DNA of 53,394 nucleotides, the filler included, from Sluysia triapertura (lineage: Eukaryota), in assembly GCA_046118255.1 (NCBI GenBank). It is 2 parts of 2 records of this genome, joined end to end, with 100 filler letters (N's around TTAATTAATTAA, not from the genome) between each part and the next. Parts side by side here need not be neighbours in the genome. Positions count along the whole stretch, not along the records: positions 29,827 to 53,394 come from JBJNIA010201818.1; 1 more part is not named here. One strand, given 5' to 3'. Positions 31,600 through 52,585 of the stretch are shown here, one piece after another. Position 1 is the first letter of the stretch, and every line of letters begins with the position of its first letter. A model generated the notes under the pieces. That model saw only the letters and a program-made list of their open reading frames with translations, was not told where the DNA came from and made no database searches. The position numbers were made by a program, and so were the translations under genes.

Positions 31600-34500
31600 A
31601 TGCTCCTAGTAGAGTTGGTTGTCTCTAAAGTATTGCGGATTAAGAATGACTCTAATTTTTCGGCTTCAAATTTTTCAACGGACGACAATAAAACAAACGA
31701 TGTTGAATTTTATTCCATAACATATGGAAAGGTATCTAACAAAAAAACATGAGACATGGCAAAGCAATCACCGAAGTTACATAAACCATTTAAGGGACCA
31801 TATGAGATAATGAAAGTCACTTATACTAACTTATTTGTCAAATGTGCTACCAAAATTGGATTCAGAAATATTTTTTGTACACGCCAGTAGATGTAAGATA
31901 ACACCAAATGACGAATATAAATATTGTCAAAAAGTCAATATAAAAAGTTAAACCGAAAATAAAAGATCGAGATAAGCCACCTTCAGTTCAATCACTAGTT
32001 AATAAAAAAGTAATAATGATATTAAATGCCTCAACCGGAATGCGTACACATATTTTCCAAAATGTACGTTTTAATTATAGATGGATTCGATCTGTTATCG
32101 ATACATCCGTTACACATTATAATTTTCTAACTACTTGGAAACTTGTATTAATGGATCCACAACAACAATTTATAGCATAGATCAAATACCAATCAACATG
32201 AACGGCGTGATACATTATATTATATTAATTATATTAGATCAATGGGGAAGACTACTCTTTTGAATTAATAATCGGACTAGATGTTACAGATAAATTGTAT
32301 GATGTAGTAATTCATAGTAAGTTCGGTTTTTTAAAATATCCACAAGGTGCACAAATGATAATACCACCAGTTGTTTTCCCACATATTGGCGATGAGATTA
32401 CTCTGTAAGAAACTCCGATTTAGGCTCCAACAACAAGACCTAATTTCGAATCTGTTGATCCTGTACTACCTTCTTTTCGGTTTTCCGATATGCTTTGGGA
32501 AGAATCATCTATTAACTCATCATTCACATCTGTATGGAGCGAATTTTCGGAATCATCAGGAATTGGCTTTGACGACACAATAAGACAAACAATCATAATA
32601 TTAGAAAATCATTTTGGACACCGTTACTGGTATTAATAGTTATACTCATATCTTTAATTGGTTTTGTGAAGCCGGTAGATCTTGAAGAATGTGAGGAACA
32701 TAGAAATTAATACACTGCCATCAATAACGGAAAAGAACACTAAATATCTATTACGAACATTTATAATGAGTATTGGGAAATAAAGTTTAGTTCAAAGAAA
32801 ATGTTTTACATCATAAACTTGATATTTGTTGTATTTACCTAGAACCATTGCTAATTGGTAAACCGCACCATTTGAATAAAGTCTCAATGTTAAAAGAAAC
32901 CCTCAAAGAGTATAAAACCTTGTGCGAAACATTACAGAGCGTAAATCAACAGAAAATTATTTAAATTGCACCTCTAAATTTAAAGCTAATAATGAAATAT
33001 TGTAATTTTAATTTATAGGCTATTCGCTCTCTCATCCTTAGAGTAGTATATGCAATTTGGATTATATTGCACATAATAAATTACAAGAAACTACGTACGT
33101 TATCAATCAATAACGATAAAGATTACCGAAGTACAATTTAATACACATGGTGCGCAATTCTATAAAACCAAATATCTCGAATTTCGTAATTATGATATAG
33201 AAGTTAGAGTTTAGGTATTGCAATTGACAATCAAGTTAGATTTATGTGCTTCAAACATGCCAGACTTAATTATAGTTATTGGAATGTGCAGCAGTACTAT
33301 ATTAATAATATAGTAAATCCTGTTTCTATATGCTCTGATTTCTTGCCTAACGAAGAACGATATGTTATCTCCCATATATATGTATCACCGCAAAATTAGA
33401 ACAATTGTATTTCTCACTAAAGGGAACAAGGAAATAATCCAGCATTGTTAATTTTAATTTTAACTGCAATATTGTTTATCATCGCTTTGGCGATAGTTAT
33501 ACTTGTAATTATTATACTTGCAATTATACTTGTAATATGTGTAGTTATTCATGTTTAACTCCAAATAACGGCAACAATGATGAATAACTTTGAATCACCA
33601 CCAGGATTTCCATTAGGATTACCTCCTGTTTGCGAATATGCAGCAGGTAATCACTCACAATTAATATACGGTAGTTGGCAAATGACAAGTTTACAATCTG
33701 TTATGTTAGCGTGTTTATGTATGACATTTAATCAATGCATATATAAAATCAGTAATAATATTAAGACCACGGATTACATTAAAAGCACTTCAGCAAAATA
33801 TATATGGAAAAATACAGAGTAACACTGTTAAAATCACTCTATCTCTAAGCGCTATTTGTAATTGGTTCAAGTACGAATCAGACATTGGAAAAAATGTAAA
33901 TCACTGGATTGCGTCATGCGAAGGTCTTGCAGAAAAACAATTATTTAATGTCACCCTAACTTCAGAAATTGAGTACGAATCAAATCAAAATTCGAGAATC
34001 GATACATCATTATAAAATTAGAACAAAGCCTTTTATCTTTGATCAACTTTTAACTGTTAAATTTCTAATGTTATTACATAGGGACAATAACAATTTTGTT
34101 CGTATAACAAATCCTTTAACAGAAAATATTATATTAATTGCCTATGAACTAGATAAAGCAAGTCACTATGCTTTGACACTTCCTAATGCTAGTATCCACA
34201 TACTCTTTATGCCAGATCCCGATCTTACATTTATTGAAGTTTGGATTTTACCTTATAAAGAAATTTATGATACTTTCGGATTTTGGCCATGATATAGAAT
34301 ATTTGACTTACTAGTACCTATTTTTGACAAACATGATGTTATCACTATTTCAATACCAGCTAATAAAACCTTGAGCCTAATAAATACCACATATAAATTA
34401 TCTTATCAAACTAGATAAGAATTTCAGTTTACGATGTAAAAATCACCTACACACAAATCTAACCAACGACTCCATAATAAATCTCTATTACGCTATATCT

Positions 34501-34700
34501 AGTTATTATGTTTCAACTTCCTTTCTTTTCGTCACATCAGTAATACATGTTGTATTTCAAATTCATAAATTTTATATATTCATTAGGCATAGAATCATCT
34601 TTTTATCAAAACAAAATTATAAGTAGTATATTAAAATGAGTAAAGGTATTTCCTGGTTGCTGATGGCTGCCAACTATCCATTTTTGGTAGAAGAAAGGAG
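31600..34700 (+). mobile_element. Decayed 3' half of a gypsy-like LTR retroelement with extra coding remnants
   Basis: Integrase GPY/F motif SPKLHKPFKGPYEI; retropepsin-like VIDTSVTH and ELIIGLD; long hydrophobic helix near 33435-33545; Cys-rich remnants; purine tract agaagaaaggag then TG at 34701. Confidence 0.65.
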
Positions 34701-34898
34701 TGATTAACTCATATTTTATTCTTAATATGTATCATATTTTAACATTAAATTTTGAATTTAACTATCTTACTTTCATTATAAATACATAGTTATCACTTTA
34801 ATTATAATAATGTAGAGTATATTTTAAGTACATCTTTATAAAATTTCAATTTATTTCATGTAATTATCACCTTATTATACTTCTCTTTCCAGTTAATC

Positions 34899-35120
34899 AT
34901 GTCTACTCAACTACGCGTTACAATCTGTGCAATTTGTCAACAACCAATTAGGAAATACTACGTTTCGATTATTCCCTGCAAACATAGATTCCATTTTCGC
35001 TGTCTATTTTTTGTTTGATTTTGCTCCAACTCCTTTTCCTCCTGCTCCATGTATCGCGTCACGATCAAAGAATGCGAAATTTACTATAGAAAACAGTTTA
35101 GGAGATCTTATTCACTGTAA
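34899..35120 (+). pseudogene. RING-H2 finger protein pseudogene
   Basis: CAIC-x13-CKHRFHFRC-LFFV*FCSNSFSS-CSMYR; TGA at the conserved Trp position and the last Cys reads Tyr; ttctctttccag acceptor just before the ATG. Confidence 0.75.
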
Positions 35121-35419
35121 AGTATGCCAGACCTGACTCAACTCCTGTTGTAGCTTATAATGGGCTCCAGGAGGGTCCTAGTGTTAATATTTTCCAACTC
35201 CCTAGTTTTTCGAATGTTCATATTTTGTGTAATGGATTTCAGGTGCCTAAGCCTGATTATCCACCGGATCTGACCAAATCTCAAAATCGAAATTAAAGAA
35301 GACGTCAATTAAAAATTTTTACAAATTACATGCTCATCCACGTAACAATCCTTTCCTAAAAAAGAAATAATCGTTTTTTAAATATTATCATTTATTATAA
35401 ATTTTATGTGAGAACAAAA

Positions 35420-36130
35420 AACAACCTTAAACATTTTCCATTAAAAAATTGAGTGTGAGGAATTGAAAATTAATTAAACTATAAAAACTAAAGTTAAATT
35501 CATCATTTTTAAGTATGTCAATAATAATAATAATTGTTATTTTAATGCAAGAACTGATTCATAAAAAATAGATCGAGTAGAGTAGTAGAAAAAACAAGAA
35601 TTGATTGTTAATCCAACTGTTATGTTTTGCTTGTCGTACCATGTAAATGTCAAAGTCGTTTTAGTCGGTTTAATCTGTAAACGAGGTTTTGATGATTTGT
35701 GTAAGAGTAATTCCTGATTGTGAGTTTGGGAGTGATTGGACAATACAGAGATATAAAAGCGAATAATTAAAAAATTTATAATCCAAGATATGAATGATTA
35801 ATGTAGAAAATAAGAAGGTCAATGTATTGGTAACGTTTATTATTTTTTAATTTTATTTTATTTATTAAAATATAGTTATATATTTTTGGGAGTTTTATAT
35901 TAAGGTTAATTATTTTGGGTCAAATGCATTTTTAGGAATTTCCCTTTTATTTTTATTTGAAAAATTTTACATGTATATTTATGTAATTATTAGAAATCAA
36001 CGTTTATAAGTATATTTTTATGGATTTCCCGATTATTATTTAAGTTTTATTTTTTTGACATTTGTTTAGAAATTCTCCTTTGATTCTTGATTCGTAATGG
36101 TTATCGTTGTGTCGCCTCTGGTTCATTGAT
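35420..36130 (+). pseudogene. TIL-like/mini-exon module, copy C (inverted relative to A, B and D)
   Basis: MSIIIIIVILM start; DC*SNCYVLLVVPCKCQS...RGFDDLC; EGQCI then gtaac; degenerate unit array; terminal motif shared with 28945 and 30578. Confidence 0.55.
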
Positions 36131-36639
36131 TAGTTAAGCGTATTAATATTATTATTTAATTTTTGTGACTCTATTAATTTTAGTTGACTGTAATTGATTT
36201 ATTTATATTATTATTTTTATTGTGCAAGTATAAGTTATTAAATTGTAGTTTGATTTTGTAATTAATAAATTGTTATTAGATTTGTTAATTTAAATTTGAA
36301 GATTTAGGAGAATAATTAATCGATTGATAAATAAAGATTTTAAGATTTAAGGTACTTATATCTAATTTATTTAATTTATTGAAGATATTAAAACTCTGTT
36401 AAGGAATTTGGTTCGATTTTAATTCATTATTGTTAACATTACTAAAGACACAACATTTTAGTTTTTTATTTTATTTATTTAAAGACATAACATTCATTTT
36501 TTTATTTGTTTTTATAATTTTCACGATTTGGCATCTTCACTTAAATAAAATAAAGTATACTCTTAATTATATAAAATTAAAATTAAGTTTAATTGAATTA
36601 AAGTAAGGGATGAGAATTAAAAAAAGATCCTAATCGTGA

Positions 36640-37980
36640 AAAATAAACTCTCTGGCCCATTACTGCAATATTTGGAATTCGATAGCAAACTGCCAACACT
36701 TGAATATTTACTATGTTCAAGCACGTTCAGATTAAGAAGTGATCACTGTTGCACAATTCTGCAATTAAATATCCACAGAAATGACACAGAAATTATTTAT
36801 CCCATTTCAATTTCAATATTAAATATATTCTGGGACAAGAAAACATGGTCACGGGTGGCTCTATCGCGAGCAAGAATCAGCATTATGGATTTTCTACCAA
36901 TGTTTACTGCTCAGAACTTACAATCAATCCACCATCGGTCAAGAGAATTCTAAAGTAGTATAATACCAGTACTCTGTGACCACCAGATATTATAAATCTC
37001 AAGTATAGTACTAAAACTACTTCGTATAAAATCATAATACCCCCCATTCAGAAGCTAAATCCACATACGGCTATTAACACCCAAAGACATCAAACAAAGA
37101 TAAGCGTCATCGGATGTGCGTCTACTATTATGACTTTATTGACATGCGATAGTCACTGCAATTGCGCAAAGTTCCACCTTTCTTGAAGAAATGTGACTCA
37201 TGAAGATGAAGATTAGTGCACATTTGATTTTTTCTATATCAAGGAATTCGGGGCCTACAGGGAACGGAATTTTTATGAAAGTTCCTGTCGTCGGTATCTA
37301 GTTTTAATTTGGTGTAGATCGAATTGGTTATGCAATAAATTCGGAAATACCAGTTCCATGTTTGATAGAATATTTGTTACGTTGACTTGAAGCTGTATCT
37401 TAATATGGGACAATTGCTTGAAGCAAATGCTTAACGTTTTAGTAAGGTAGTTAACTAGAAACTTGTATGGGATAAAAATTCGGCCCCTTTTATAGGTTAA
37501 AAGGAATTTTCATACTTTATTGAATTGGACATTTTTGAACTTTGAATATTTTCTGAATATTGAGATTGGAAGTTCCTAAAAGAATTATCACAGATCATGG
37601 AGCTCAATTAGATTATTAACAACATACCACCCATTGTTATATTGTTATGATTGATATATTTTATTGATGCTCAATAACATCTCATACTTAATCTCAATTC
37701 AACATAATGGGATGGATGCATTATCATTAATTTTATTAGGCTGGCGTAATATAACACATTTCAAACGGATATTCACCAATCCAAATAGTTCCATTCCAAC
37801 AAGCCCAATGAGCTAATTAAAATCCCAGTACACAGAAGTTCTTATATTCGCATACAAAAACATTTCGGATCGGTAGAAATGGAAAATACATCTTCATTAA
37901 AACCAGCATACATTGCACCATACGAAGTTTTTCATATTAATACAGACAACAAAGTAGCTGCTATAAATATATAATAGTTA
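36640..37980 (+). mobile_element. Gypsy pol remnant (RNase H end to integrase)
   Basis: IKYILGQENMV..ALSR, VPKRIITDHGAQL, MDALSLILLGWRN and SLKPAYIAPYEV fragments. Confidence 0.75.
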
Positions 37981-38579
37981 TCTGGTGTAAACTAAAACTA
38001 ATAACAGTTCTAGTAAATCGTCAAAATGAGACACTGAAATGAAGTCTTTCAACAGTACTAAATAAATATGTTTTATTTAAGATCACGATATAAACTAGCA
38101 TTAAATTTCAATAATATTAAATTTATCGTGCTTCTCGCGTCTTCAAAGATGACGAATGCGGTGGCTTTGAACCAAACTTACAATTCTATTACAATTAACA
38201 AAATAAATAAACCATATTGTTTATATTGTCAATAATACTACTTGTTACAATCAATAAAACATCCAAAACCATTTGTCATTCTCTGAATTGTATATAAACC
38301 AAATATAAATTAATAATGTTAGACTGTCATAATAACTTAAAAGGTTTTAATTTTAAAACATTGCCTCTTATTTTATGCTTTGCTCATATTTTCATTTTAT
38401 CATATTTTAGTGAAGCGTTATTTTAATTATAGCATTATCAAAAGGAATAACAATTACATTTTAATTCTAAATTTAACGAATCTAAAAACACTTTAATTTG
38501 CTTTAAAATTGAAAATAATTTAAACACTAATATATTAACCAAAAACAAAGAATATGTTGGGACTTATACTAAAATGTCA

Positions 38580-39480
38580 AAAATATTCTTAATAATAATA
38601 ATAGAAATTCCCAAAAATATTTATTACAATAATAAGTCTTTTTTAATATTATGGATCAATGATAAAATCGAAAATAACAATTTAATATATTTTAAGCAAT
38701 CTACAAAATAATGCTTATATGAAAAATGAAATTATTAACAATTATCAAAAACAAATTTATATCTATAAGGACCATTAATATCAATTTGTGTATTTAATCC
38801 TAATCTAGTCATAACACAGGAATAAAATCTCTAAAAATGTCAATCTAAAATGATACATATTTACCTCAAAATTGGGTATCTCTTATGTAAATTAAATTAA
38901 TTCCCTAAAATAACAAATTTGGTTACAAAATTGGCTACAAATATACTTAACTTTTTTAAATTAAATATAGAATAAACTATAAAATGTTATGACAAAATAT
39001 ATAATATTAAAATTAATACTTATTTAAAATAAAAGTTTATTTTAAGTGGGTCAATAAAATATTCTTGATTAAAATTAATATTAACAAAAAAATTTAAAAA
39101 ACGTTACTTAAAACATGGATCTTCTTTTTATAATCACCTGTGAATGTTTTATTTTTTCTAAGAGTGTGTAATTTATACTTTTATTTTATTCAATCAAGAA
39201 TTACTCTTACACAAATCATCACAACATCTTTTAAAGATTAAACCGACTAAAACGAATTGACACATGGTAAAACTTGTCAAGCAAAGCATAACAATTCGAT
39301 TAACAATCAACTCTCATTTTTTCTTCTATTGTACTCGATCTACTTTTTCATGAATCACTTCTTACATTAAAATAACTATTATTATTATTGTCATACTTAA
39401 TAATAATTAATTTAACTTTAGTTTTTACAATTAAATTAAATTTCAATTCATCACACTAAATTTTTAATGGAAAATGTTCT
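38580..39480 (-). pseudogene. TIL-like/mini-exon module, copy D
   Basis: 39170-39480 is a close inverted copy of 35420-35720; MTIIIIVILM*...DC*SNCY; 30-nt exon 39137-39108 ending EDPCF then gtaac. Confidence 0.55.
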
Positions 39481-39774
39481 CATTCCCAACAAACAATTTC
39501 ACAAACATATCAAAATCATTTTAGGATTCTTCTATTTCATAGCAATCACTCAATACCCAACTCGTCATCTTTTCATCATTGTAAATATGAAAATTTAAGC
39601 ATTTTTTAAATTAAAATTTAATTAAAATTCGACTTTATTCAATATAGATGCTTTCCTCACATGAATTCAGTCAAACTTTATCTCCATCGAAAGGTCTCTT
39701 TAAAATACATATGCACAATTACACTTTTAACTCATTTAAAAGTTATTCATACAAACGTAATTTTCCTTAATTAA

Positions 39775-40611
39775 CTCTATCGCAGCCATTGAGGTCGAAA
39801 ACGACTGCATTCAGAAAATCAATGATTTCTGTACTTTGTAAGCGTTCTACTGCTGAATCAACAAATAAACCTAAACTAATAGCTGACTGTAACGTAAATA
39901 TGAGTGGAGTCTATCTTTGCGATCAATTGCTAATTTATTATGCCGTGAACCGAAAAACCACGAAATGGTGGAAGCGAGTGTTTTTTCGTTTAATGGATTT
40001 AGCACTTATAAATTATGTGGTCTTGATGACAAGTGTCATTCCAGAGAAGGATGAGGAAAGACAGTTTCATAAGAAATTTAGAATGGAATTGGCCCACCAG
40101 CTGGTACAGCCGTTGTTAGACGTTTACTCGCATTCTGAAGTTCGACGTTCCGATTCAAGATGGCAAGGGAAAACACTTTGCAGTTAGTCAAACTCTATGC
40201 CGTAGTTGTGTTGTGAGTACATATGATAAAACGCCTGCTTGAAAGTATAGAAAAACAAAAACCACAAACTATTGTACAAAGTGTTGTAGATACATTTGCC
40301 GATACGCTCAGATATCAAGTGAATAATGTGTATATAGCAGTTAAATTTTTGTGGCTGTATGTTTGTCTCTAATTTGTATGTTTTTGCAGGTTTTTTGACT
40401 ATGTAAAATGTTGGAAAATAATTTTATGTTTTTGTATTATTTTTAACTTTTGTGACTGAATTGTGTCTTTTGAACGACTTTATGCATATTCTGCTCAAAG
40501 AGATGAACAAATTGGTGTATCACTTGCCATGTGCTTCTTAATATGTTAGTCATTAGTAATCTATAAATTGGTTCACCCGAATTTAGCAAAAACAATCTGG
40601 CTGCCGTAGAG
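39775..40611 (+). mobile_element. Internally deleted piggyBac transposon
   Basis: TTAA on both sides; TIRs ctctatcgcagcca and tggctgccgtagag (12/14 match); transposase C-terminal part KPKLIADCNVNMSGVYLCDQ...KWWKRVFF plus Cys-rich tail remnant. Confidence 0.9.
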
Positions 40612-41859
40612 TTAAGTTAATTAAGATTTTAATTAATTAATTATTTTAACTTATTTTATTCTAAGTTTAAAGATTTTTATTATGAGTAAAAAGTTGTTAA
40701 ATACTTTGTAAGGTACTCAGGAGGCTCCAGGTATTTTCATCTTCACATGCTGATTCATTTTTCTACTTTTTTATTTCAATTAAAGCATTAAATTTATCTT
40801 TGTTATTATGAACCATGATTTTAATTCTTGAACATTTCAAAGGTTCCAAAAATTTTACAAGGTTAGTCGAATGTCTTAAAAGTTTAATAAGGCCTTAAAT
40901 GTCTTCAAAGATTCCGAAAGATCAACAAGGTCTCAAATGATCCCAAGGTTCAGAAGGTATCTTTACACTTCAAGACATCTTTTCAAACCTTACTTAAGTC
41001 TTCAATACCCTACAAGGGTATTTGGAACTCCAAGGTGTTCTTCAGTTTCAAAATGATTATAAACATTTTACTGTTCATTATTCTTGCTCTAGGAATATAT
41101 AATTATATTTATATTATCATATTTCAGATATTTTATATCTCTTTTCTTTACATTCATTTTAAATCTTTTGCCTTTTTATCTACTTTCTTACACTAAATGC
41201 ACAATATCAACAAATAAATATTTTTAAGAACTAGAATCAAAAATATACATAATAACGTACTCGAGTAAGTGGATGTTATATTTGACAAATAGTAGTTGAA
41301 TTCGTGCAGCGTTTTAATATAATCAAATCTTGGTGGTAGCAAGTCAGATTCAAAATTTCTAGTTATTGTTTAGTTAATTTCAGATCTAGTACGCATACTT
41401 TACCATAAATGATTATTAATGGATCAGATCTAAATTCATTACATTTTGACGGTGTTGGTTTAGGAGTTTCAGTTAAATTATGTAAAAATAATTTCATAAC
41501 AATGTTAGATGATGACGAAACATTAGAACACCCAATATCATTTACTAAAAATGATTCTGCTCCTTTCAATAAATGAAATAAAATTATAATTTTCATAATT
41601 CTCAAACATTTTAACTATCAGCATCATTTTTAGGATTTTGTATTTTTTAAAAATTTTTATGTATTTTATATTTCAGATACGTATCAAGAACATACTTGAT
41701 ATTTGAGAATAATTGAAACCAGTTAAATCCACTTCTTAATATTGTTAACGTCAAAAATATTTTTATCAATCACATTATTTTCACTAGCTAATGACGTTAA
41801 AGCCATTTTTATACTTCCAATGAAAGGTTATTACTGAATTTCAAAATAATTGCATATGT

Positions 41860-42745
41860 TATTAAATAATCACCAGATCCTGTAGTGTTCATAATTTGAT
41901 TGTTCTAAATAAAATTTTCCATCTTTTTGGGACAACAAAACAATACCCTTCGGGCCTAATTTAATGATCCATATTGAAATTTGTTTTAACAAATCAGAAT
42001 TTCTAAAGATTGTTTTGCCACAATATTAAATTTTATAGTGCAACATTTGAATTACTTTTCAAAATGCTCGAGATTATATCAATTATTTTTGATTATTTAC
42101 TTTTATTTTCTTCACATAATTTCTGTAATTTATTTATCACTAATATATCAGTTGGTTCATAGAGTTTATTACAATAATCAATTAATATTGCTAATATTTA
42201 ACGTTGACAGATTTTTATTTAAGTAATCAAAATCGATATATTTATGAATGTTCATCTCACTGATTTGTAGTAAATATATTGGTAAATATATTTATTTGGT
42301 AAATATATTGCGATAATTTCAAAGTTATCAATAATATTAACATATGACCAATTAATGTGAGAATTTTTATTTTTAATAAAATAATTTTTTAGATCTGCAC
42401 CTAATGAAATTAACAATGAACATTGGCATCTAAGTTTTATAATTACATCAGCTATATTTCTAGCAACACCGCCACAAATCTGTTTCATACTACAACTATA
42501 AGTACCTTCTACTTTGAGATTATTCAAATTAACTTCAGAATTTATTCAACAATCTATGTCAACTACAGTTCCACCAATTGCAATGTATTTATCTTGATTT
42601 GAAAAAGATTTTTTCCGCATTTTTCATATTAACGATTTAAAACGGAAAATTAACTTTATAATTTTGTACTTTATGCTTCACGGATATCATTTGTTCATTC
42701 TAATGTGGTAGTAATATTTGTATAAATTAAATGGTGTTTCATGTT
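41860..42745 (-). pseudogene. PfkB-family kinase pseudogene, pseudouridine kinase-like
   Basis: IAIGGTVVDID, CGGVARNIAD, ISLGAD, IIKLGPKGIVL and MNTTGSGD motifs broken by stops and frameshifts; upstream ETPFNL may be a glycosidase tail. Confidence 0.75.
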
Positions 42746-43753
42746 TAGAAAAATAAACAATTAACGAAACTTATTTAAATTTAAAAGTCAATATATTTTA
42801 TTAAATAATTCCATAACATTTCCAAGTGAGACGTCACATTCTATGGTGCCGTTATTATTGAACATGAACTGACTGGTATTTGACGAAGATTCTGATGCCT
42901 ATTGACTATTTAATTGGATTGATTATTAGGATAATAATATTAATCTGCTGGGTTGACTTAGAAGTTATCATGCATACATACATACAGGAAATAAACGAAC
43001 ATACATATATACCCGCATGCAAACAAGAAGAGAATGAAAAAGTAAGATAAAATAATTTTGACAATATTAAAATCATAGCGATAACAATTATGATGTTAAA
43101 ATTATAAGATAATTATGTAGCTTAATGTGATAATGTTGATATAATTACGAGAATATTACATTTTTGTGAAAATTATTATTGTGATAGAAGTTATGATAAC
43201 AATAAACATAATTAATGATAATTATATGCAATGACTATGTTTGTGTTTTGAATGAATCGAGTAATTTATTTAGTGTTTTGTTTATGTAAGAAATGTTCAT
43301 ATGTGATGAAATGTGTTTGTGATTTTGATGTGAAAATGCGGAGATCACTACAAATATCTGTATATTGGCTGAAATAATTTCATTTTATTGTATTAATATA
43401 AATATTCAAGTATTGATTATATTTTGGATTTGTGAACAATTAAAGTAAATTAATTTGTGATAGGATTTAGTTAAAAATTTTAAGGCTTAATCATAAACCC
43501 TAAGCAAATTACATATTATTCCATAAATTGAACAAGATGTGATAATTCAAGATAGATTTAAATCATTAAATTATTAAAAAAATTTGCGCAGAATTAAAAT
43601 TAAACCATAAATCTTAGATTAAGTAATTTATCAAATATAATTAGAAAGTAAAAAGTTAAATTATAAACTAAAATCGTTTTTTATAGATACAGGTACGCGT
43701 TCTCTATGTCGCATACTCTTTTACAGGCAAGAATTTCTTTTGCCGTAGGTTAA

Positions 43754-43907
43754 NNNNNNNNNNNNNNNNNNNNNNNNNNNNNNNNNNNNNNNNNNNNNNN
43801 NNNNNNNNNNNNNNNNNNNNNNNNNNNNNNNNNNNNNNNNNNNNNNNNNNNNNNNNNNNNNNNNNNNNNNNNNNNNNNNNNNNNNNNNNNNNNNNNNNNN
43901 NNNNNNN
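43754..43907. other. Assembly gap
   Basis: Run of N. Confidence 1.
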
Positions 43908-44070: not shown

Positions 44071-44133
44071 AATATTAATATTAATACATTTTCGTGATTT
44101 ATTAACATAATATTAATTATATTTCTTATTTAG

Positions 44134-44410
44134 CAACAACCAACTGAGGTAAAATTTGTAATACGTAGATTAACAAATCTGTTTTTAATATTATATTATA
44201 TTTCTTTTTAGCAACAATTTAGTGAAGTAAAATTTATAATACTTATATTAAGAAATTCATAATTAATGCATTTTTCGTCTAAAGATAAGATATTATATAA
44301 AATTTCTTTTTTTAGCAACAATTTAGTGAGGTAAAGTTGATAATACTTACATTAAAAATATTGCAATTATTGTATAATATAATATTTATTTTCAGAAACA
44401 TTCCAGTGAG
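44134..44410 (+). CDS. Four 15-nt microexon candidates (44134-48, 44212-26, 44316-30, 44396-410)
   Basis: Each has a pyrimidine tract, AG, 15 nt and GTAAA; phase 0 gives QQPTE, QQFSE, QQFSE, KHSSE; introns 63, 89 and 65 nt. Confidence 0.7.
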
Positions 44411-45249
44411 GTAAAGTTGATAATATTCATATTATATTAACAATGATACTATCATTATCGAATTCTGATTATTATTATTATTAATTATTGGTATCTAATT
44501 TTTTCAAAAATTATAGCTTTATCTTTGTTATAATTTAAAAAATAATATTTGTTTTACTGCTTCAAATAATAAAAAATGGTTGACATAAAATTAATTACAA
44601 AATAGTGCAACGAAATATAAGGTTATATTTTAACAGCAATCATAACATCAATGAAATGGATAAAGCAGGTTTTAAAGTGAAGAAGAACACTAAATCAAGT
44701 CATCCATATGGAATGATACATATCAGATATATAATCATATTGTAAATGTTAGTTAAAGCACAGTTTTAAAATGTCGCATATGAATAATTTTAAATATTAC
44801 AAACTTTAGGTCCTTAAATTAGAAACGAATTATTATGATTTGGGGAATGAATAGTACAGAATTGTTGTTTTATTATAAAACAACAAAATAGAGTATTGAG
44901 GGTGTTTAGAAGATTCCACTAGATAATGCTTGTTGCAGTTTCTATAAAAGTCTATTGATAAATTTAAATTTCTTATCAGAACATTATCAAACAGTTTAAA
45001 ATAGTACTAAAAAGGTCAGCAGTGATTTTGAAATAAATGTTATTGACATTATTATTGCATTGAAATATGTACTTAGGCTAAAGCGAATGACTTAAGATCA
45101 GTAGGGATTTTAGTCAAGGATTTATTTATTTTCTTTACATCTATGCTTAATGTATAAGATGCATTGGCTTTTTTTGTAAAATTGTTTCTTTTTTATTTAG
45201 ATAAGACGCATTTCAATAAAAAATTTTATTTTACCATTTGTTTTAATAA

Positions 45250-45650
45250 TAATGACTGAAGAAACTCATATGCAGCCAAGAAAGAATTGGAAATAATAGA
45301 ATAAGCAGAGCTCAATGGAAATAGAGAAGAAGGTAGACATTAAGAGATAAATGAAGCTAATGCGAGGAGATGGAGGGCAAATAAATCGGTTTTGAGTGTT
45401 TATGATACAACAAAAAGAGCCAAGAAGAAAGAAAAATTCATATTTGCCCGAACTTGAGATTGAATTCAAAAATTGGGTTTTAAATCAACGGAAGGAAAAT
45501 ATAAAAGTTTCTGTTTTATCTACTAAATTTGAAGCCAAAAAAAATTTCTTATTTTTCAACTACTCGAGTATACGCCGTATCATAATTGTCTTTGATTTTT
45601 CCATTTTTTTATTTGTACAAGACGTGGCTTTTGTACAAGATTTTATGGTA
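45250..45650 (+). mobile_element. pogo/Tigger-like transposase remnant (CENP-B-type HTH)
   Basis: INEANARRWRANK and LPELEIEFKNWVLNQRKENIKVS; possible right end gattttatggta. Confidence 0.7.
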
Positions 45651-47226
45651 CCTGTATAAAGCTTATTTTCATTGATTTGATTCTTTATTGGAAAATGCAA
45701 TTAAGCTTATTGGAATGAAAAATACGTAAAATAATGTTTATAATGATATTAAAAGAGAGATGTCATTAGGAAATGAAGCTGAGTTAGGGTCTGTGTTTTT
45801 CTTTTTTCAAGTCACTTTACATATTTTTCATACTAATTATTGACCATCGGTATACTTGTACAATTTCACAATCTCATAAACGAATATGAAACTTATTTGA
45901 ATTTAAATACTCAAAATAAGCAATAAAAGAATAATCATCTATTAGTAATAAAAGCAAAGAATAAGAAAATCCAAAAGTAATGGTAGCAGATAGTGTTAAG
46001 AGTTTGTATTTATAATAAATTTAATCCCTAACTAAGCATTTACTATTTATTAAACAACTTACAATTTTAAAATGTTCTTTGCCAGTTACGAGTTTGTGTT
46101 TCTATTAAATGGTTCAGAATATATTAATGGCTTCGTATTTTAACCTCTTGACGGTTTTATCCGAACTGCACTCGGATGTGACATTTTTTCGTACACTGAC
46201 GATTGCGATGTATTTCAAAATATGTTACACTAAAACTACTTATTGATTAAATTTATGGTAATTAATAAATGTAGTCAAATAAAAATATAAAAAGTGACAA
46301 TTTTTTACGCCTTTTCTCAAAAAATCCAAATGTTATGTGGTTAAGACCTAAGAATAAAAATGGATTTTTTTGACACTTCGAAACGAAAATAAGTTCCAGA
46401 GGCAATTACTCGATCTTAAATTTGAAGACTACTACACACATTAGCTGCGTGTAAAAATCTTTTTTGAATATTTTCCATAAATGCTTTTCTTGTTGACAGT
46501 ATTTTGTTAATTATATTTGTAAATTAAGATATTGTTTTCATAATAAAGTTTTAAAATTCTCGCATTTCGCCATTTTCTGGAATCAGCCAATTTATTTTTG
46601 CAAAAATGAATATAAATAAGTGTAATTTGGGTTAAAAATACTTTTTTAAATTATAATGTATTATTTATTTTTATAAATAAATAATAGAAACCGCCACCTT
46701 TTTTCATAGTCCCGTTTTTGGCGGATGAGAGAGTAGTTACTATGTATTGTTTTAAATTAATTTTTGAATCTCTCAAATAGTTTCCACTTTACATTCATTT
46801 TAAATTCTTGCTTTTCATTTTAAAAATAAAATATCTAGCAAGATAAATGCTAGGTAATGCAGAAATTCTAGTATGATATTAATACATTAATGTAAGGTTG
46901 TATTATTGTCGCTATACCGCCGGACATGAATTTTGCACTTCGTAACATGCAAGTTTTATTGTACAATAATGTAAAAAAAAGTTTACATTATTTAAAATTC
47001 GTAAAATATTACCAGATGTATAAATAAATGTGCGAACATTTAAGTGTTAAAAAAGCAACAATTCGTGTTTTAATTTCTGATTTTCAACGTACAATCAAAA
47101 GGAAAGTCAGTTGTAACTTTGTTAGATGATATGTGTATGACTTTAAGTTTACTTTTAACATTCAATAATCAGTAGTGATGATGAATTATTATAGTGGAGA
47201 AAAAATTAATTGTATTCAATTGGTAG

Positions 47227-47733
47227 ATTTTCCCAACCCAAAGCAGTCATACTCCCAGTAAAACTTATCATTCAACAGCAGAAGGTGGTGGTTTTGAAAC
47301 TTCTGGAGATTTGAATGGAGAATCAACAGTATCACAAGGATATGGTACTTCAACTTATAGCCCATCAGCAGTGGGAATATCAACTACAGGACCGTCAACG
47401 AGAGAAACATCAAAGAATATTAAACCAAAAATAGGACCATCAAAAATGGGTATATCATCTATAGGAGCAACAATAACGAGTCAGTCAGATGTAATGATGA
47501 CAAAAGGAACACCATCAACGGTCATGTCAACAACAGAACCAACAACTGCAACTAAGTATACATCTGGCAGAGATACAACCACTGCATATACAACAGATAA
47601 ATCTGGAGCGTCTAGTACAGAATCATCAGATGATGATGAATATGGTAATGATGATGGTAATGATGATGATGATGAAGATGATGAAGAGTATGAGGATGAA
47701 AAGGATGATAGCCACAGTTCAAATGAAAGCCAG
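47227..47733 (+). CDS. Mucin-like Ser/Thr-rich exon with acidic tract, phase 0-0
   Basis: tag acceptor at 47224-26; 169 open codons IFPTQSS...DDDEDDEEYEDEKDD...ESQ; gttata donor. Confidence 0.75.
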
Positions 47734-48631
47734 GTTATATTTTAAAATCTAACGGAATACTTGTGGTTTTTCTTATTTTAAATTTTACGATAAGTGGTAG
47801 GCATACCTGTAACAACTTAACTTTAACAACTTTAACGTATAATTTACTATGTAGATTATATTAATTTATAATTTACTTTATATTACTTAGAGGATCTTAT
47901 TTCTTATGCACTAAGAATTCCTCAAATTACGTTTATTGAATTTATTCTGACAATCTTAGTATTTCTGTCCAAATTTATTAAATTTTTCACTTAAATTTTC
48001 TTTAATCAACAAAACAATTAAAAACTAACATTTAATAAAATCATAATAATCAAAGGTGCTAGACAAACATAAGAAATAAATATAAAATAAACAAACAATA
48101 GTATCTTACGATCAAAAATATTTAAAGTATTTAATCGAACTAAATTCAGATTTTATGAGGATTTTCAACCACTAATAAAAAATATTAATTACTTACTTTT
48201 ACTAGTAAGTAATTTAAATTTAAAATTTTAAAACTTCTTTTTTAAAATAATGTATTAAAATAAATTTATTTATTATCTATTCATATATTTGACAGTTTAT
48301 GCTGATTTGTATCAGTTTGTGTTCATATTCATTATTTAATTTCTATTTTATTAAAAGCATGTTTATTTCGTTATTATCGTTATTATCGTCCTACTTGCCA
48401 ATTAAATTTAATGAGTCTCTTTCTATGGTTTTGAATTTTCTTTGTTTTTAAAATGTTTCCTTAAAACTATTATGATATTCTTACAATTACTAAGGTATAT
48501 TAGATTTGTTTAATTTATATAATAATTAAAATAATTCATATTAATAATATAATAATAATAAAATAAAAATAATAATAGTAATTATTACTTTATCAAAATA
48601 TTTTATTTGAATTTATTATATTTCAATTTAG

Positions 48632-48734
48632 AGTGTTTTTAGTGAGGTAATTTTACTACTTTTATTTTATAATTTAATTTTGTTAATAATTTTCAGTTTT
48701 CATTTTATTTTTATTTTAGCCCGGTTTTGGAGAG
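48632..48734 (+). CDS. Two 15-nt microexon candidates (48632-46, 48720-34)
   Basis: tttag|agtgtttttagtgag|gtaatt (SVFSE) and ttttag|cccggttttggagag|gtacat (PGFGE); 73-nt intron. Confidence 0.65.
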
Positions 48735-50842
48735 GTACATTTTATGATTCAGTTTGCTTTTTAAATTAACTATGAGTTGATATTAACATTATATTTTATA
48801 ATTTTTAATTTTGTTTTGTTTTAAAGTTAGATTAATTAATTTTTTCCAAATTTTATATTACACTACTTTATATTATTAAGAGTGCGACAATGGTTGGTGT
48901 TCAAATTTATTATTTATTTATTTTTAATCAATTAAAACAATTTATTGAAATTAAACCTTATTCTTTAAAACTAAATGCACTCTGATTTGTGTGTACCGGA
49001 ATTGATAAAATTTAATTAAATTTTAAAATTTAAAGAAATTTTGAACATTGAAACAAAATATGATTAACAGCTTAAGGCACACTTTGTTGTGAAAAAATCC
49101 GACAAAAAATCAATTTTTTATTAAAATAACACACTTTAGAACATTGTTTTAACAAAAAATACAAAAACAATCAAAATTTTAATTACAATTTTGGATTTTT
49201 GAGCAATCTTACATTTTTACATCAACTTTCATTTTCTTTCCTTTCAAATTTCTGTAAAATAATGGCTTTTATATAAATTGACGAATTTGCAAATGATAAA
49301 TCGTAAAAGTGATAAATATCAGTAAATAAATATGACATGTGAAATGAACAGATGTGATTGTATATCGTTTCAATAAAATGAATTAGGAATGTAATAATTC
49401 AAATCTAAAATTTTTAATAAGAATAAAGGAATATATCTTCCTTATTTTTATGTTAATATTTCTTTATGGTCCCAATTCAGATGCCAATAATTTTGCCAGT
49501 CTTTTTCATATATACTAAGCAAAACTTAATGTTAGAGATCCGCCTATAATATACGGTTTATTCTCAATAGAGAGATGTACTTAAAGGATTTTATGAGGAT
49601 AACAAATTGCTTCTTCTAAAAATGATTAAAAATTAAGAATAAAATCGGTCTATTACTTTACATCTTAAGCTTCACTAATTGTTAATTGAATATTGAATCT
49701 CTTATGGGTATATGCGAAGAATACAGCTTTTTAACCTTATCTTTAAAGGATTTATTTTTGTTTCTTTTTTATCAGTTCTGTGAGTTTATGTCGTGTAGTT
49801 TAGTTTTGTATATGTATATCAATTTATTTAGTGGTTTATATATTAATTCACTTTTATCTTATGTAAAATCAGAAAACGTCAAAAACTAAAAATGCATTGC
49901 CAATGTAACATAGGTTGTATAATAAATCACGAATTATAATTTATTACTTAGTCAGATTTTTTGACTTTACTTAAAAAGGTCCAAACTTAACTTAGAGAAT
50001 CTTTTTGTTTTGCTTTTCGTGATCAATTTATACGAAAATTGCCAACATATAATACGTTATACATTCATAATAATACACTATCAATTCAATTAGTATAGGT
50101 TTTTTTATTTCACGCGAAGTTTTAATCTGATATATTTTACAGTTAAAAATTTTTGTGAATTTTTTATAATATATAACTTTTAATCTATAATTAATAACTT
50201 ATAATTGTTTGACTAATTTAATACTTTTGATTTTAAAGCATAAAATTTTAATGCACACAATATTTCAACGTAATGTAAACATTCTTGCCATTCTTACATT
50301 CCAAAAATAAGAAATAATACGTAAACATTAAACAGATTATTACAAAGAAGTTCAATAAGAAAAATATAACCTAATTTTGAATATGTTCGTAATTTCAAGT
50401 TGGACTCCGAATTCTCTTCCAATACAAAAAGTTCAGGGACATTTTGCGCGTTAGACATGTAGATTTCATTTGACTGAGTTTCACTAGATGTATAAGAAGT
50501 TGCATCAGATGCCGGGGAAGATTTGTTTTTGGTGCAATTCTTTTATAAAAATGTTCTACTTGTAGACTAATTTTAAAAAGTGATAAACCATGACCTAAAC
50601 ATCTTAAAATCGTCGCATAAATTCTCATGGAGTTAAGCGCATGAGAATAGTATTCAACTCAAATAGTATTCATTTTTCTTTCTAGATTTTCCTTATTAAC
50701 CCGTAATTGTTTGTGCTGGCTAATTAAGTATGATATGGTACTATTTATATTTCTTATATTTTGTTTGAAAGTATTTCTAGGTGATTCTTGCTATTTGTAT
50801 TTCAAAGTACATGTATTCATTTATAATTCCTTTTATCACCAG

Positions 50843-52585
50843 GACAAATCAATAATAGGTCCAATGATAATTGGTCCATCAGTAACTGGTCAGCCATCGA
50901 TAGGACAATATAGAATTTCCAAGTCCAAAGTGCCCTTAAATGCAATGAAATCATCAATTAAGGGTCCGTCAACAACCAGCTATTCAACTATGGGTCGGTC
51001 AACAACAGGCTACTCAACTACGGGACCCACAACTACCGGTTATTCAACTACGGGAACCACAACTACCGGTTATTCAACTATGGGACCCACAACTACGAGT
51101 TATTCAACTATGGGCCCTACAACTACGGGTTATTCGACTATGGGCCCTACAACCACAGGCTATTCAACTATGGACCAAACAACCACAGGTTATTCGTCAA
51201 CTACAAGTACATCAAAATGGACACCAGCAACAAGTACATCAACAACGGGTACATCAAAAATAACATTACAAGTGGCCCCATCAAAAACAAAATCAATTAT
51301 AAAGCGAATGGACAAATTAGCACCAGGACCATCAAATACGGGCTATTCAACTGTGGGAAAACCAGGAACAACTATGTATTCATCAAAAGGTACTTCTACA
51401 ACAGGTACTTCTACAACTGGTAAGTCACTGTGGACACGAACAACTGGTGCATCGCAAGGAATGTTAGAAATAGAGGAGTCGGTCATTGGAGCCAAAAGAA
51501 TGGGCCCTTCAAGTAGGGCTTATTCAACAATGCCACCAACAGGAGTATCAACTCAATATTTATCAACAACAGGAACATCATCATGGACACCAACAACAAG
51601 AGGTACGTCATCATGGACACCAACAACAAGAGGTACGTCATCATGGACACCAACAACGACAGGTACTACGCAAGGAAAGTTAGTAATAGGACTTTCTGTG
51701 ATGGAACCATCAAGTAGGGCTTATTCAACAATGCCATCAACAGAAGTATCAACTCAATATTCATCAAGAACAGGAACGTCATCATGGACACAAACACCAA
51801 CAACAAGAGGTACGTCATCATGGACACCAACGACAGGTACTTCGCAAGGAACGTTAGTAAGAGAACAGTCTGTGATGGTAAACAAAAGAATTGGTCCATC
51901 AAGTAGGGCTTATTCAACAATACCACCAACAGGAGCATCAACAACAGGAACGTCATCATGGACACCAACAACGACAGGTACTTCGCAAGGAACGTTAGTA
52001 AGAGGACAGTCTGTGATGGTAAACAAAAGAATTGGTCCATCAAGTAGGGCTTATTCAACAATACCACCAACAGGAGTATCAACTCAATATTTATCAACAA
52101 CAGGAACGTCATCATGGACACCAACAACAACAGGTACTTCGCAAGGGAAGTTAGAAGTAGGACAGCCTAGGATGGTAACCAAAAGTATAGGTCCATCAAG
52201 TACGGCTTATTCAACAATTCCATCAACAGGAGTATCAAGTAAGTATTCAATCGCAACAGGAACACCAACAACAGGTAAGTCACTATGGACAAGAACAACA
52301 GCTACATCACTCGGCATGTCAGAAATGGAAAATTCAATGATGGGAATCAAAGGAATGGGTCAATCAACAACAGGTTCAACAACAACAATGGGTTTAACAA
52401 CAGGTCCGTCGAATACAACAGTTAGTTCAACAACGAAAACGACGGAAAGATCCATTAAAGGTACAAAAGGAATGTTACCAGTAGGAATATCAACTGTAGT
52501 CAAATCAAAAGCAGGAATGTCAGAAAATTTGGGTCCACCAAAAACAAAAGTCAGTCATGCAATACCAACAGAGTCATCAATAATG
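50843..52585 (+). CDS. Large mucin-like Thr/Ser/Gly repeat exon, phase 0-0
   Basis: ttttatcaccag acceptor; 581 open codons with TTTGYSTMGP and GPSSRAYST...GTSSWTPTT repeats; gtaggt donor at 52586. Confidence 0.8.
50962..51195 (+). repeat. 30-nt coding tandem repeat x8
   Basis: ggg.cc.acaactac.ggttattcaactat units. Confidence 0.9.

What the first reader, a model, noticed from the sequence alone, without database searches (positions are those of the whole stretch)
44134..52585. Mucin-like gene interleaved with clusters of symmetric 15-nt microexons (MEG-like architecture)
Seen: six segments of exactly 15 nt, each with a pyrimidine tract plus AG before and GT after, all ending in GA(G/A). In phase 0 they encode QQPTE, QQFSE, QQFSE, KHSSE, SVFSE and PGFGE. 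They form two clusters around a phase 0-0 Ser/Thr/acidic exon (47227-47733) and precede a second phase 0-0 mucin exon (50843-52585). Any exon could be skipped without a frameshift. The first cluster arose by tandem duplication of exon plus intron. The second keeps length and splice sites despite dissimilar introns, which argues for selection. Known: schistosome micro-exon genes use symmetric tiny exons to vary secreted proteins. Inference: this is a comparable combinatorial splicing system for a surface or secreted mucin, invisible to ORF finders.
Basis: partly seen in the sequence, partly recalled or inferred. Interest (0 to 1): 0.88.

Follow-up and report, generated by a model that had tools for sequence, protein, structure and literature searches.

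The report
Mucin-like gene with duplicated 15-nt microexons
An unidentified AT-rich animal has a gene for a floppy, serine/threonine-rich protein in which six probable exons of only five codons lie beside two very large ones; the layout is real and easy to miss, but no RNA data show that the tiny exons are spliced, let alone mixed and matched as in blood-fluke micro-exon genes.

Summary
Chance is excluded: 7 such sites of 15 nt, against at most 2 for any other length and a null mean of 0.55. Both large phase 0-0 exons (47227-47733, 50843-52585) check out. Cluster 1 arose by tandem duplication of exon plus intron; cluster 2 is probably an older copy. New here: both large exons carry a hidden 5/10-residue period, the size of one microexon, although the sequences do not match. 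It is not a schistosome-type MEG: microexons are 3.8% of the visible coding sequence against about 75-80%. The nearest design is the schistosome mucin SmPoMuc, with its tandem 27-nt exon. No homologue, signal peptide or RNA run was found. Best reading: real microexons, spliced across short introns and included or skipped as blocks, in a disordered, probably secreted mucin-like protein. Combinatorial skipping remains possible (about 0.25).

The parts
44134..44148 (+). microexon 1 (15 nt, phase 0-0, QQPTE)
   Evidence: TTTAG/GTA sites, member of 4-copy repeat
44212..44226 (+). microexon 2 (QQFSE)
44316..44330 (+). microexon 3 (QQFSE; differs from microexon 2 by one synonymous change)
44396..44410 (+). 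microexon 4 (KHSSE)
44114..44455 (+). tandem array of four exon+intron units; inferred introns of 63, 89 and 65 nt with 15-16% GC
47227..47733 (+). large exon A, 169 codons, phase 0-0: Ser/Thr-rich part with 5/10-residue period (residues 40-134) followed by an Asp/Glu block
   Evidence: open only in frame 0, starts right after TAG, GC steps at both ends
48632..48646 (+). microexon 5 (SVFSE)
48720..48734 (+). microexon 6 (PGFGE); 73-nt intron before it
50843..52585 (+). large exon B, 581 codons, phase 0-0, 42% Ser+Thr, no Cys, basic; pentads in register with the exon start, 10-residue repeats (50970-51195) and about seven 47-67-residue super-repeats
   Evidence: no confident fold

Best explanation
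This is the middle part of one spliced gene for a large (at least 780 residues), cysteine-free, Ser/Thr-rich and probably disordered protein, most likely a secreted O-glycosylated mucin- or glue-type protein of an AT-rich invertebrate. One ancestral 15-nt phase 0-0 exon (roughly xxFSE) was copied together with its flanking intron: long ago to give the pair before exon B, and more recently to give four copies before exon A. Shown: the splice motifs, phases, the duplication of cluster 1, the coding-like base pattern and the pentad period of the large exons. Inferred: that the segments are spliced. Also inferred: the short 63-89-nt introns are recognised across the intron, so the tiny exons are included together and any skipping is mostly of whole blocks (a cluster, or the acidic exon A with its weaker sites). 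The microexons would then add short Glu-ending spacers. Their five-residue size equals the repeat unit of the large exons, which may mean they keep the repeat register.
For: Excess of 15-nt sites over all other lengths and over the null. Splice positions are invariant while introns change length (63/89/65/73 nt) and the exon never does. No in-frame stop occurs in any copy, GC1>GC2>GC3 in phase 0, and cluster-1 pN 0.21 is below pS 0.59 (very few, non-independent changes). Exon A is open from its first codon and its first Met is residue 74, so a phase-0 coding exon must lie upstream; the microexons are the best-scoring sites in the piece (the splice model was trained on them). Microexon sites score higher than the donors and acceptors of the large exons. 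Lag-5/lag-10 autocorrelation z is 2.5/4.0 in A and 4.8/11.8 in B, and 17 of 17 Gly in B residues 1-120 sit at pentad position 1 counted from the exon start. No fold is predicted (pLDDT 32 and 40; shallow alignments, so weak evidence). Intron definition of short introns is established knowledge, not tested here.
Against: No transcript evidence at all. No start codon, signal peptide or last exon was identified. No homologue was found, so conservation across species is unknown. The microexons do not resemble the pentads of the large exons in sequence, so the size match could be chance; the register at each exon border is a 1-in-5 event. A broken pfkB-like pseudogene and transposon debris nearby show that this region holds dead sequence.
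Confidence: 0.55

Rival explanations
1. The microexons are real and are skipped independently, giving a repertoire of variants as in schistosome MEG or SmPoMuc genes.
For: All eight seen exons are phase 0-0; up to 48 distinct peptide combinations are possible; the copies differ at many non-synonymous positions. SmPoMuc is a precedent for a mucin whose tandem small exon varies in number among transcripts (PMC2576457).
Against: The variable part would be at most 30 of at least 780 residues (3.8%). Symmetry is inherited from duplication. The microexon splice sites are strong and the introns between them short. No paralogous family was seen. No RNA evidence.
Confidence: 0.25
2. The segments are or were exons, but the gene is decaying or the microexons are no longer used; exon A splices directly to exon B.
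For: No RNA holder; neighbouring pseudogene and transposon remnants; no homologue anywhere.
Against: 2,340 coding bases without a stop or frameshift in a 25% GC background, all 16 splice dinucleotides intact, exon GC kept high beside 11-16% GC introns.
Confidence: 0.1
3. The gene is real, but the product is a structural fibre or glue protein whose pentad repeats form an ordered beta-rich polymer, or an intracellular or membrane-anchored protein; the microexons serve as register-keeping single repeat units.
For: Strict pentad register with Gly at position 1 and Tyr every ten residues; low-confidence beta hairpins in the super-repeats.
Against: pLDDT is below 50 almost throughout, and no structure appeared with a repeat alignment; the microexon peptides do not fit the pentad profile.
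Confidence: 0.08
4. The pattern is a chance product of an AT-rich tandem repeat or an assembly artefact.
For: Four of the six lie in one local repeat next to an assembly gap.
Against: The copies are only 66-79% alike, so this is not assembly stutter; the independent pair 4 kb away has the same length, phase and sites; null tests.
Confidence: 0.02

Closest known systems
Schistosoma mansoni polymorphic mucins (SmPoMuc; PMC2576457)
   Same: Mucin-type gene in which a small symmetric exon has been duplicated in tandem with its flanking introns in the 5' part.
   Different: There the exon is 27 nt in ~1-kb units over 94% identical, up to 20 copies, all exons small (15 exons, mean 60 bp), a multigene family with demonstrated transcript variation. 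Here 15 nt in 78-104-nt diverged units, two clusters between very large exons, no family seen, no sequence similarity found, splicing untested.
Schistosome micro-exon genes (MEGs; PMC5825161, PMC4015677)
   Same: Symmetric exons within the 6-36 nt range; in-frame skipping is possible; some MEG proteins are predicted to be O-glycosylated and mucin-like.
   Different: MEG microexons form ~75-80% of the coding region of small secreted proteins; here 3.8%, beside exons of 507 and 1743 nt.
Avian fast troponin T 'P' exons (PMC7581897)
   Same: Up to seven small exons, each encoding a His/Glu-rich repeat motif, spliced in together as a regulated block; a model for block inclusion. That each encodes five residues is from my own knowledge and was not checked.
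   Different: Intracellular muscle protein with a conserved core; no relation in sequence.
Aphid bicycle genes (PMC9168663)
   Same: Insect genes with many microexons that escape similarity searches.
   Different: Almost all internal exons are phase 2, about 17 small exons per gene, CYC motifs; here phase 0, no cysteine, two very large exons.
Drosophila Sgs3-type glue proteins and casein/SCPP genes (own knowledge, not tested)
   Same: Sgs3 has Thr-rich pentapeptide repeats; SCPP genes have tiny phase-0 exons that often end in Glu codons.
   Different: Sgs3 repeats lie within one exon and end in a Cys domain; SCPP exons carry Ser-x-Glu sites, seen here in only one microexon (KHSSE).

Membership tests
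Schistosome MEG | ~75-80% of coding region in 6-36-nt exons | tested here: not met
   90 of 2340 visible coding nt, 3.8%; definition. The unseen ends could raise this but hardly to 75%.
Schistosome MEG | microexons symmetric (multiples of 3) | tested here: met
   all six 15 nt, phase 0-0
Schistosome MEG | signal peptide or membrane anchor | tested here: inconclusive
   no convincing first exon in the piece; weak candidate at 43252; an N gap lies at 43754-43907
Schistosome MEG | exon-skipping variants in transcripts | not tested
SmPoMuc | small exon tandemly repeated with its introns | tested here: met
   4-copy repeat, in design only
SmPoMuc | 27-nt exon in ~1-kb near-identical units; 15 small exons | tested here: not met
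   15 nt, 78-104-nt diverged units, two exons over 500 nt
SmPoMuc | sequence homology to SmPoMuc proteins | tested here: inconclusive
   no homologue of exon A or B; no direct pairwise comparison made
bicycle genes | internal exons almost all phase 2, CYC motifs | tested here: not met
   phase 0, zero Cys in 780 residues (definition)
Mucin-like proteins | long Pro/Thr/Ser-rich repeat region | tested here: met
   Ser+Thr 35% in A and 42% in B, with repeats
Mucin-like proteins | entry into the secretory pathway and dense O-glycosylation | not testable with these tools
   needs the first exon and glycoproteomics
Gel-forming or chitin-binding mucins | VWD, CK or chitin-binding domains | tested here: inconclusive
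   no Pfam domain in A or B; the gene's ends are not in view

The most novel reading that the evidence does not exclude
Outside flatworms, an AT-rich animal has independently evolved a secreted mucin whose pentapeptide building block exists both as in-exon repeats and as separately spliced 15-nt microexons, and it skips these combinatorially (with or without the acidic exon) to tune or diversify the protein, a convergent SmPoMuc/MEG-like system.
Probability: 0.2. Interest if true: 0.72.

Novelty: new variant of a known kind. Interest (0 to 1): 0.45.

Why it matters
Clusters of 15-nt exons are missed by ORF finders and most spliced aligners, so genes like this are mis-annotated and under-counted. 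This locus gives a simple pattern for finding more. It also shows microexons multiplying by exon-plus-intron duplication at two ages within one gene. If RNA showed combinatorial skipping, it would extend a diversification strategy known from schistosomes to another lineage. If inclusion is constant, it is a well-formed example of a known gene-building process in an orphan mucin-like gene.

Tried and rejected
The repeat finder and the self-BLAST worked beside them; local motif-count scripts ran over the whole piece. Homologue searches were empty for exon B, exon A and the pfkB-like piece. The 102 hits of the exhaustive search include only periodic low-complexity matches among the ten inspected. 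ESM Atlas gave nothing usable, and metagenome scans with exon B and with a microexon-plus-flank pattern were empty. Pfam, NCBIfam and AlphaFold gave nothing for the exons, so no fold search was run. No further microexons were found in the piece. A duplication of a whole 'cluster + big exon' module was not supported (compositional similarity only). Descent of the big-exon pentads from the microexon sequence was not supported. The N gap 43754-43907 was left unfilled. The organism was not identified. The original MEG paper was not held.

Full report
Observation. In register they share TT at -5/-4, AG, a final GA(G/A) and GTA in all six. A scan that does not use the exon sequence (T-rich tract, TTYAG, L bases, GTA) finds 7 sites at L=15 on the + strand and at most 2 for any other length from 6 to 39 on either strand. 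Three hundred local Markov shuffles give a mean of 0.55 and a maximum of 4. The seventh site, at 41374, lies antisense within a pseudogene and is background. The segments have GC 0.40 against 0.14 in their flanks and GC 0.60/0.37/0.23 by codon position in phase 0, as expected of coding sequence in an AT-rich genome. The copies are related, so these figures are not six independent tests.

Large exons. Exon A (47227-47733) and exon B (50843-52585) are open only in frame 0. GC steps from 0.17-0.25 to 0.37-0.40 at all four borders. 47733 is the only phase-0 donor near the end of A; 52585 is the phase-0 donor at the GC drop of B, though other phase-0 GT sites exist nearby. A is open from its first codon, directly after TAG, and has no Met until residue 74, so it needs an upstream phase-0 coding exon. 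The microexons are the best-scoring candidates in the piece, and no others were found (the scoring model was trained on these exons, so this is circular for them). The inferred introns are 63, 89, 65, 2816, 898, 73 and 2108 nt. No convincing first or last exon was found, and an N gap lies 226 nt before microexon 1.

Origin. Cluster 1 is a four-copy repeat of exon plus intron, 66-79% identical, with spacings 78, 104 and 80. All length changes fall in the introns. The intron of cluster 2 does not align with those of cluster 1, but the exon-plus-flank units show weak similarity (p at most 0.02 for several pairs), and microexon 5 shares its last nine bases with microexon 3. One ancestral exon copied at two ages is the simplest history. 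In cluster 1, pN is 0.21 and pS 0.59: a hint of purifying selection from very few changes.

Protein. A is 35% and B 42% Ser+Thr, and neither has a cysteine. A ends in an acidic block (31 Asp/Glu) and B is basic (50 Lys/Arg). In B all 17 Gly of residues 1-120 fall at position 1 of pentads counted from the exon's first codon, and the pentad register of A lands on its 3' end. A microexon is therefore one repeat unit long. The microexons do not resemble the pentads in peptide or DNA sequence, and each border register is a 1-in-5 event, so this is a lead, not a result. B also holds about seven super-repeats of 47-67 residues. AlphaFold gave no confident fold, and no family or homologue was found.

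Expression. Only one run holds exon B; it is of unknown kind and may be the source sample. I did not repeat it and kept those places out of all later search tools. Whether and how the microexons are spliced is untested.

Mechanism. Most likely (0.55) these are true exons of a disordered, probably secreted mucin- or glue-like protein. From established knowledge, introns of 60-90 nt are recognised across the intron, which removes the usual difficulty of tiny exons. The microexon sites also score higher than those of the large exons. This favours joint inclusion or block skipping; exon A, with weaker sites and the acidic block, is itself a candidate cassette. Independent skipping (0.25) could give 48 peptide combinations but would vary at most 30 of at least 780 residues. 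Decay (0.10), an ordered fibre or non-secreted product (0.08) and chance (0.02) are less likely.

Comparison. MEGs have about 80% (PMC5825161) or up to 75% (PMC4015677) of the coding region in microexons; here the share is 3.8%, so this is not a MEG. SmPoMuc is closer in design: a mucin with a 27-bp exon repeated with its introns up to 20 times (PMC2576457). Avian troponin T P exons show block-regulated repeated small exons (PMC7581897). Aphid bicycle genes are phase 2 with CYC motifs (PMC9168663) and do not fit. Ten literature searches, whose narrow term sets mostly returned few or no papers, found no report of this layout in an arthropod; that is weak evidence of absence. The host is unidentified: low GC, 63-89-nt introns and a piggyBac fragment suggest an invertebrate, which is an inference.

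Verdict. It is a new variant of a known kind of gene architecture in an orphan gene. Interest 0.45; it would deserve about 0.7 if combinatorial skipping were shown.

Noticed in passing
window 41360-42600, - strand: Intron-less, broken pfkB-family (pseudouridine-kinase-like) sequence with an in-frame stop and frameshifts; Pfam PfkB E 9e-5 for one piece. Probably a pseudogene, lying head to head with, or inside an intron of, the mucin-like gene.
   Followed up: partly
window 39771-40187, + strand: piggyBac-type transposase fragment (DDE_Tnp_1_7, E 7.5e-9).
   Followed up: partly
window 31600-35300, + strand: Decayed GC-richer element in many broken frames, with a RING-finger piece at 34842-35015 and, by eye, an integrase-end-like motif near 31790-31900. 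It may be a mobile element or endogenous virus remnant. One intact piece found no relative in viral contigs. Described only, not mended.
   Followed up: partly
window 35435-35720 and 39191-39474: Long inverted repeats (85-91% complementary) about 3.5-3.8 kb apart, suggesting a terminal-inverted-repeat element around 36600-38200.
   Followed up: no
window 43252-43285, + strand: ATG followed by a short hydrophobic peptide (MNRVIYLVFCL) and a GTAAGA donor in phase 1: a weak candidate first exon that would need a phase 1-0 exon, perhaps in the gap 43754-43907.
   Followed up: partly
window 45240-45660, + strand: Segment in the long intron that looks by eye like a pogo/Tigger DNA-binding fragment; no Pfam match.
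   Followed up: partly
window 50686: An unused-looking strong acceptor whose context resembles the acceptor of exon A (shared GTATTCA and TAGATTTTCC) but leads to a stop in frame 0; alignment score low.
   Followed up: partly
window 51420, 52239, 52275: Exon B contains consensus-like internal donors (GTAAGT/GTAAGTC) that are out of phase and presumably silent.
   Followed up: no
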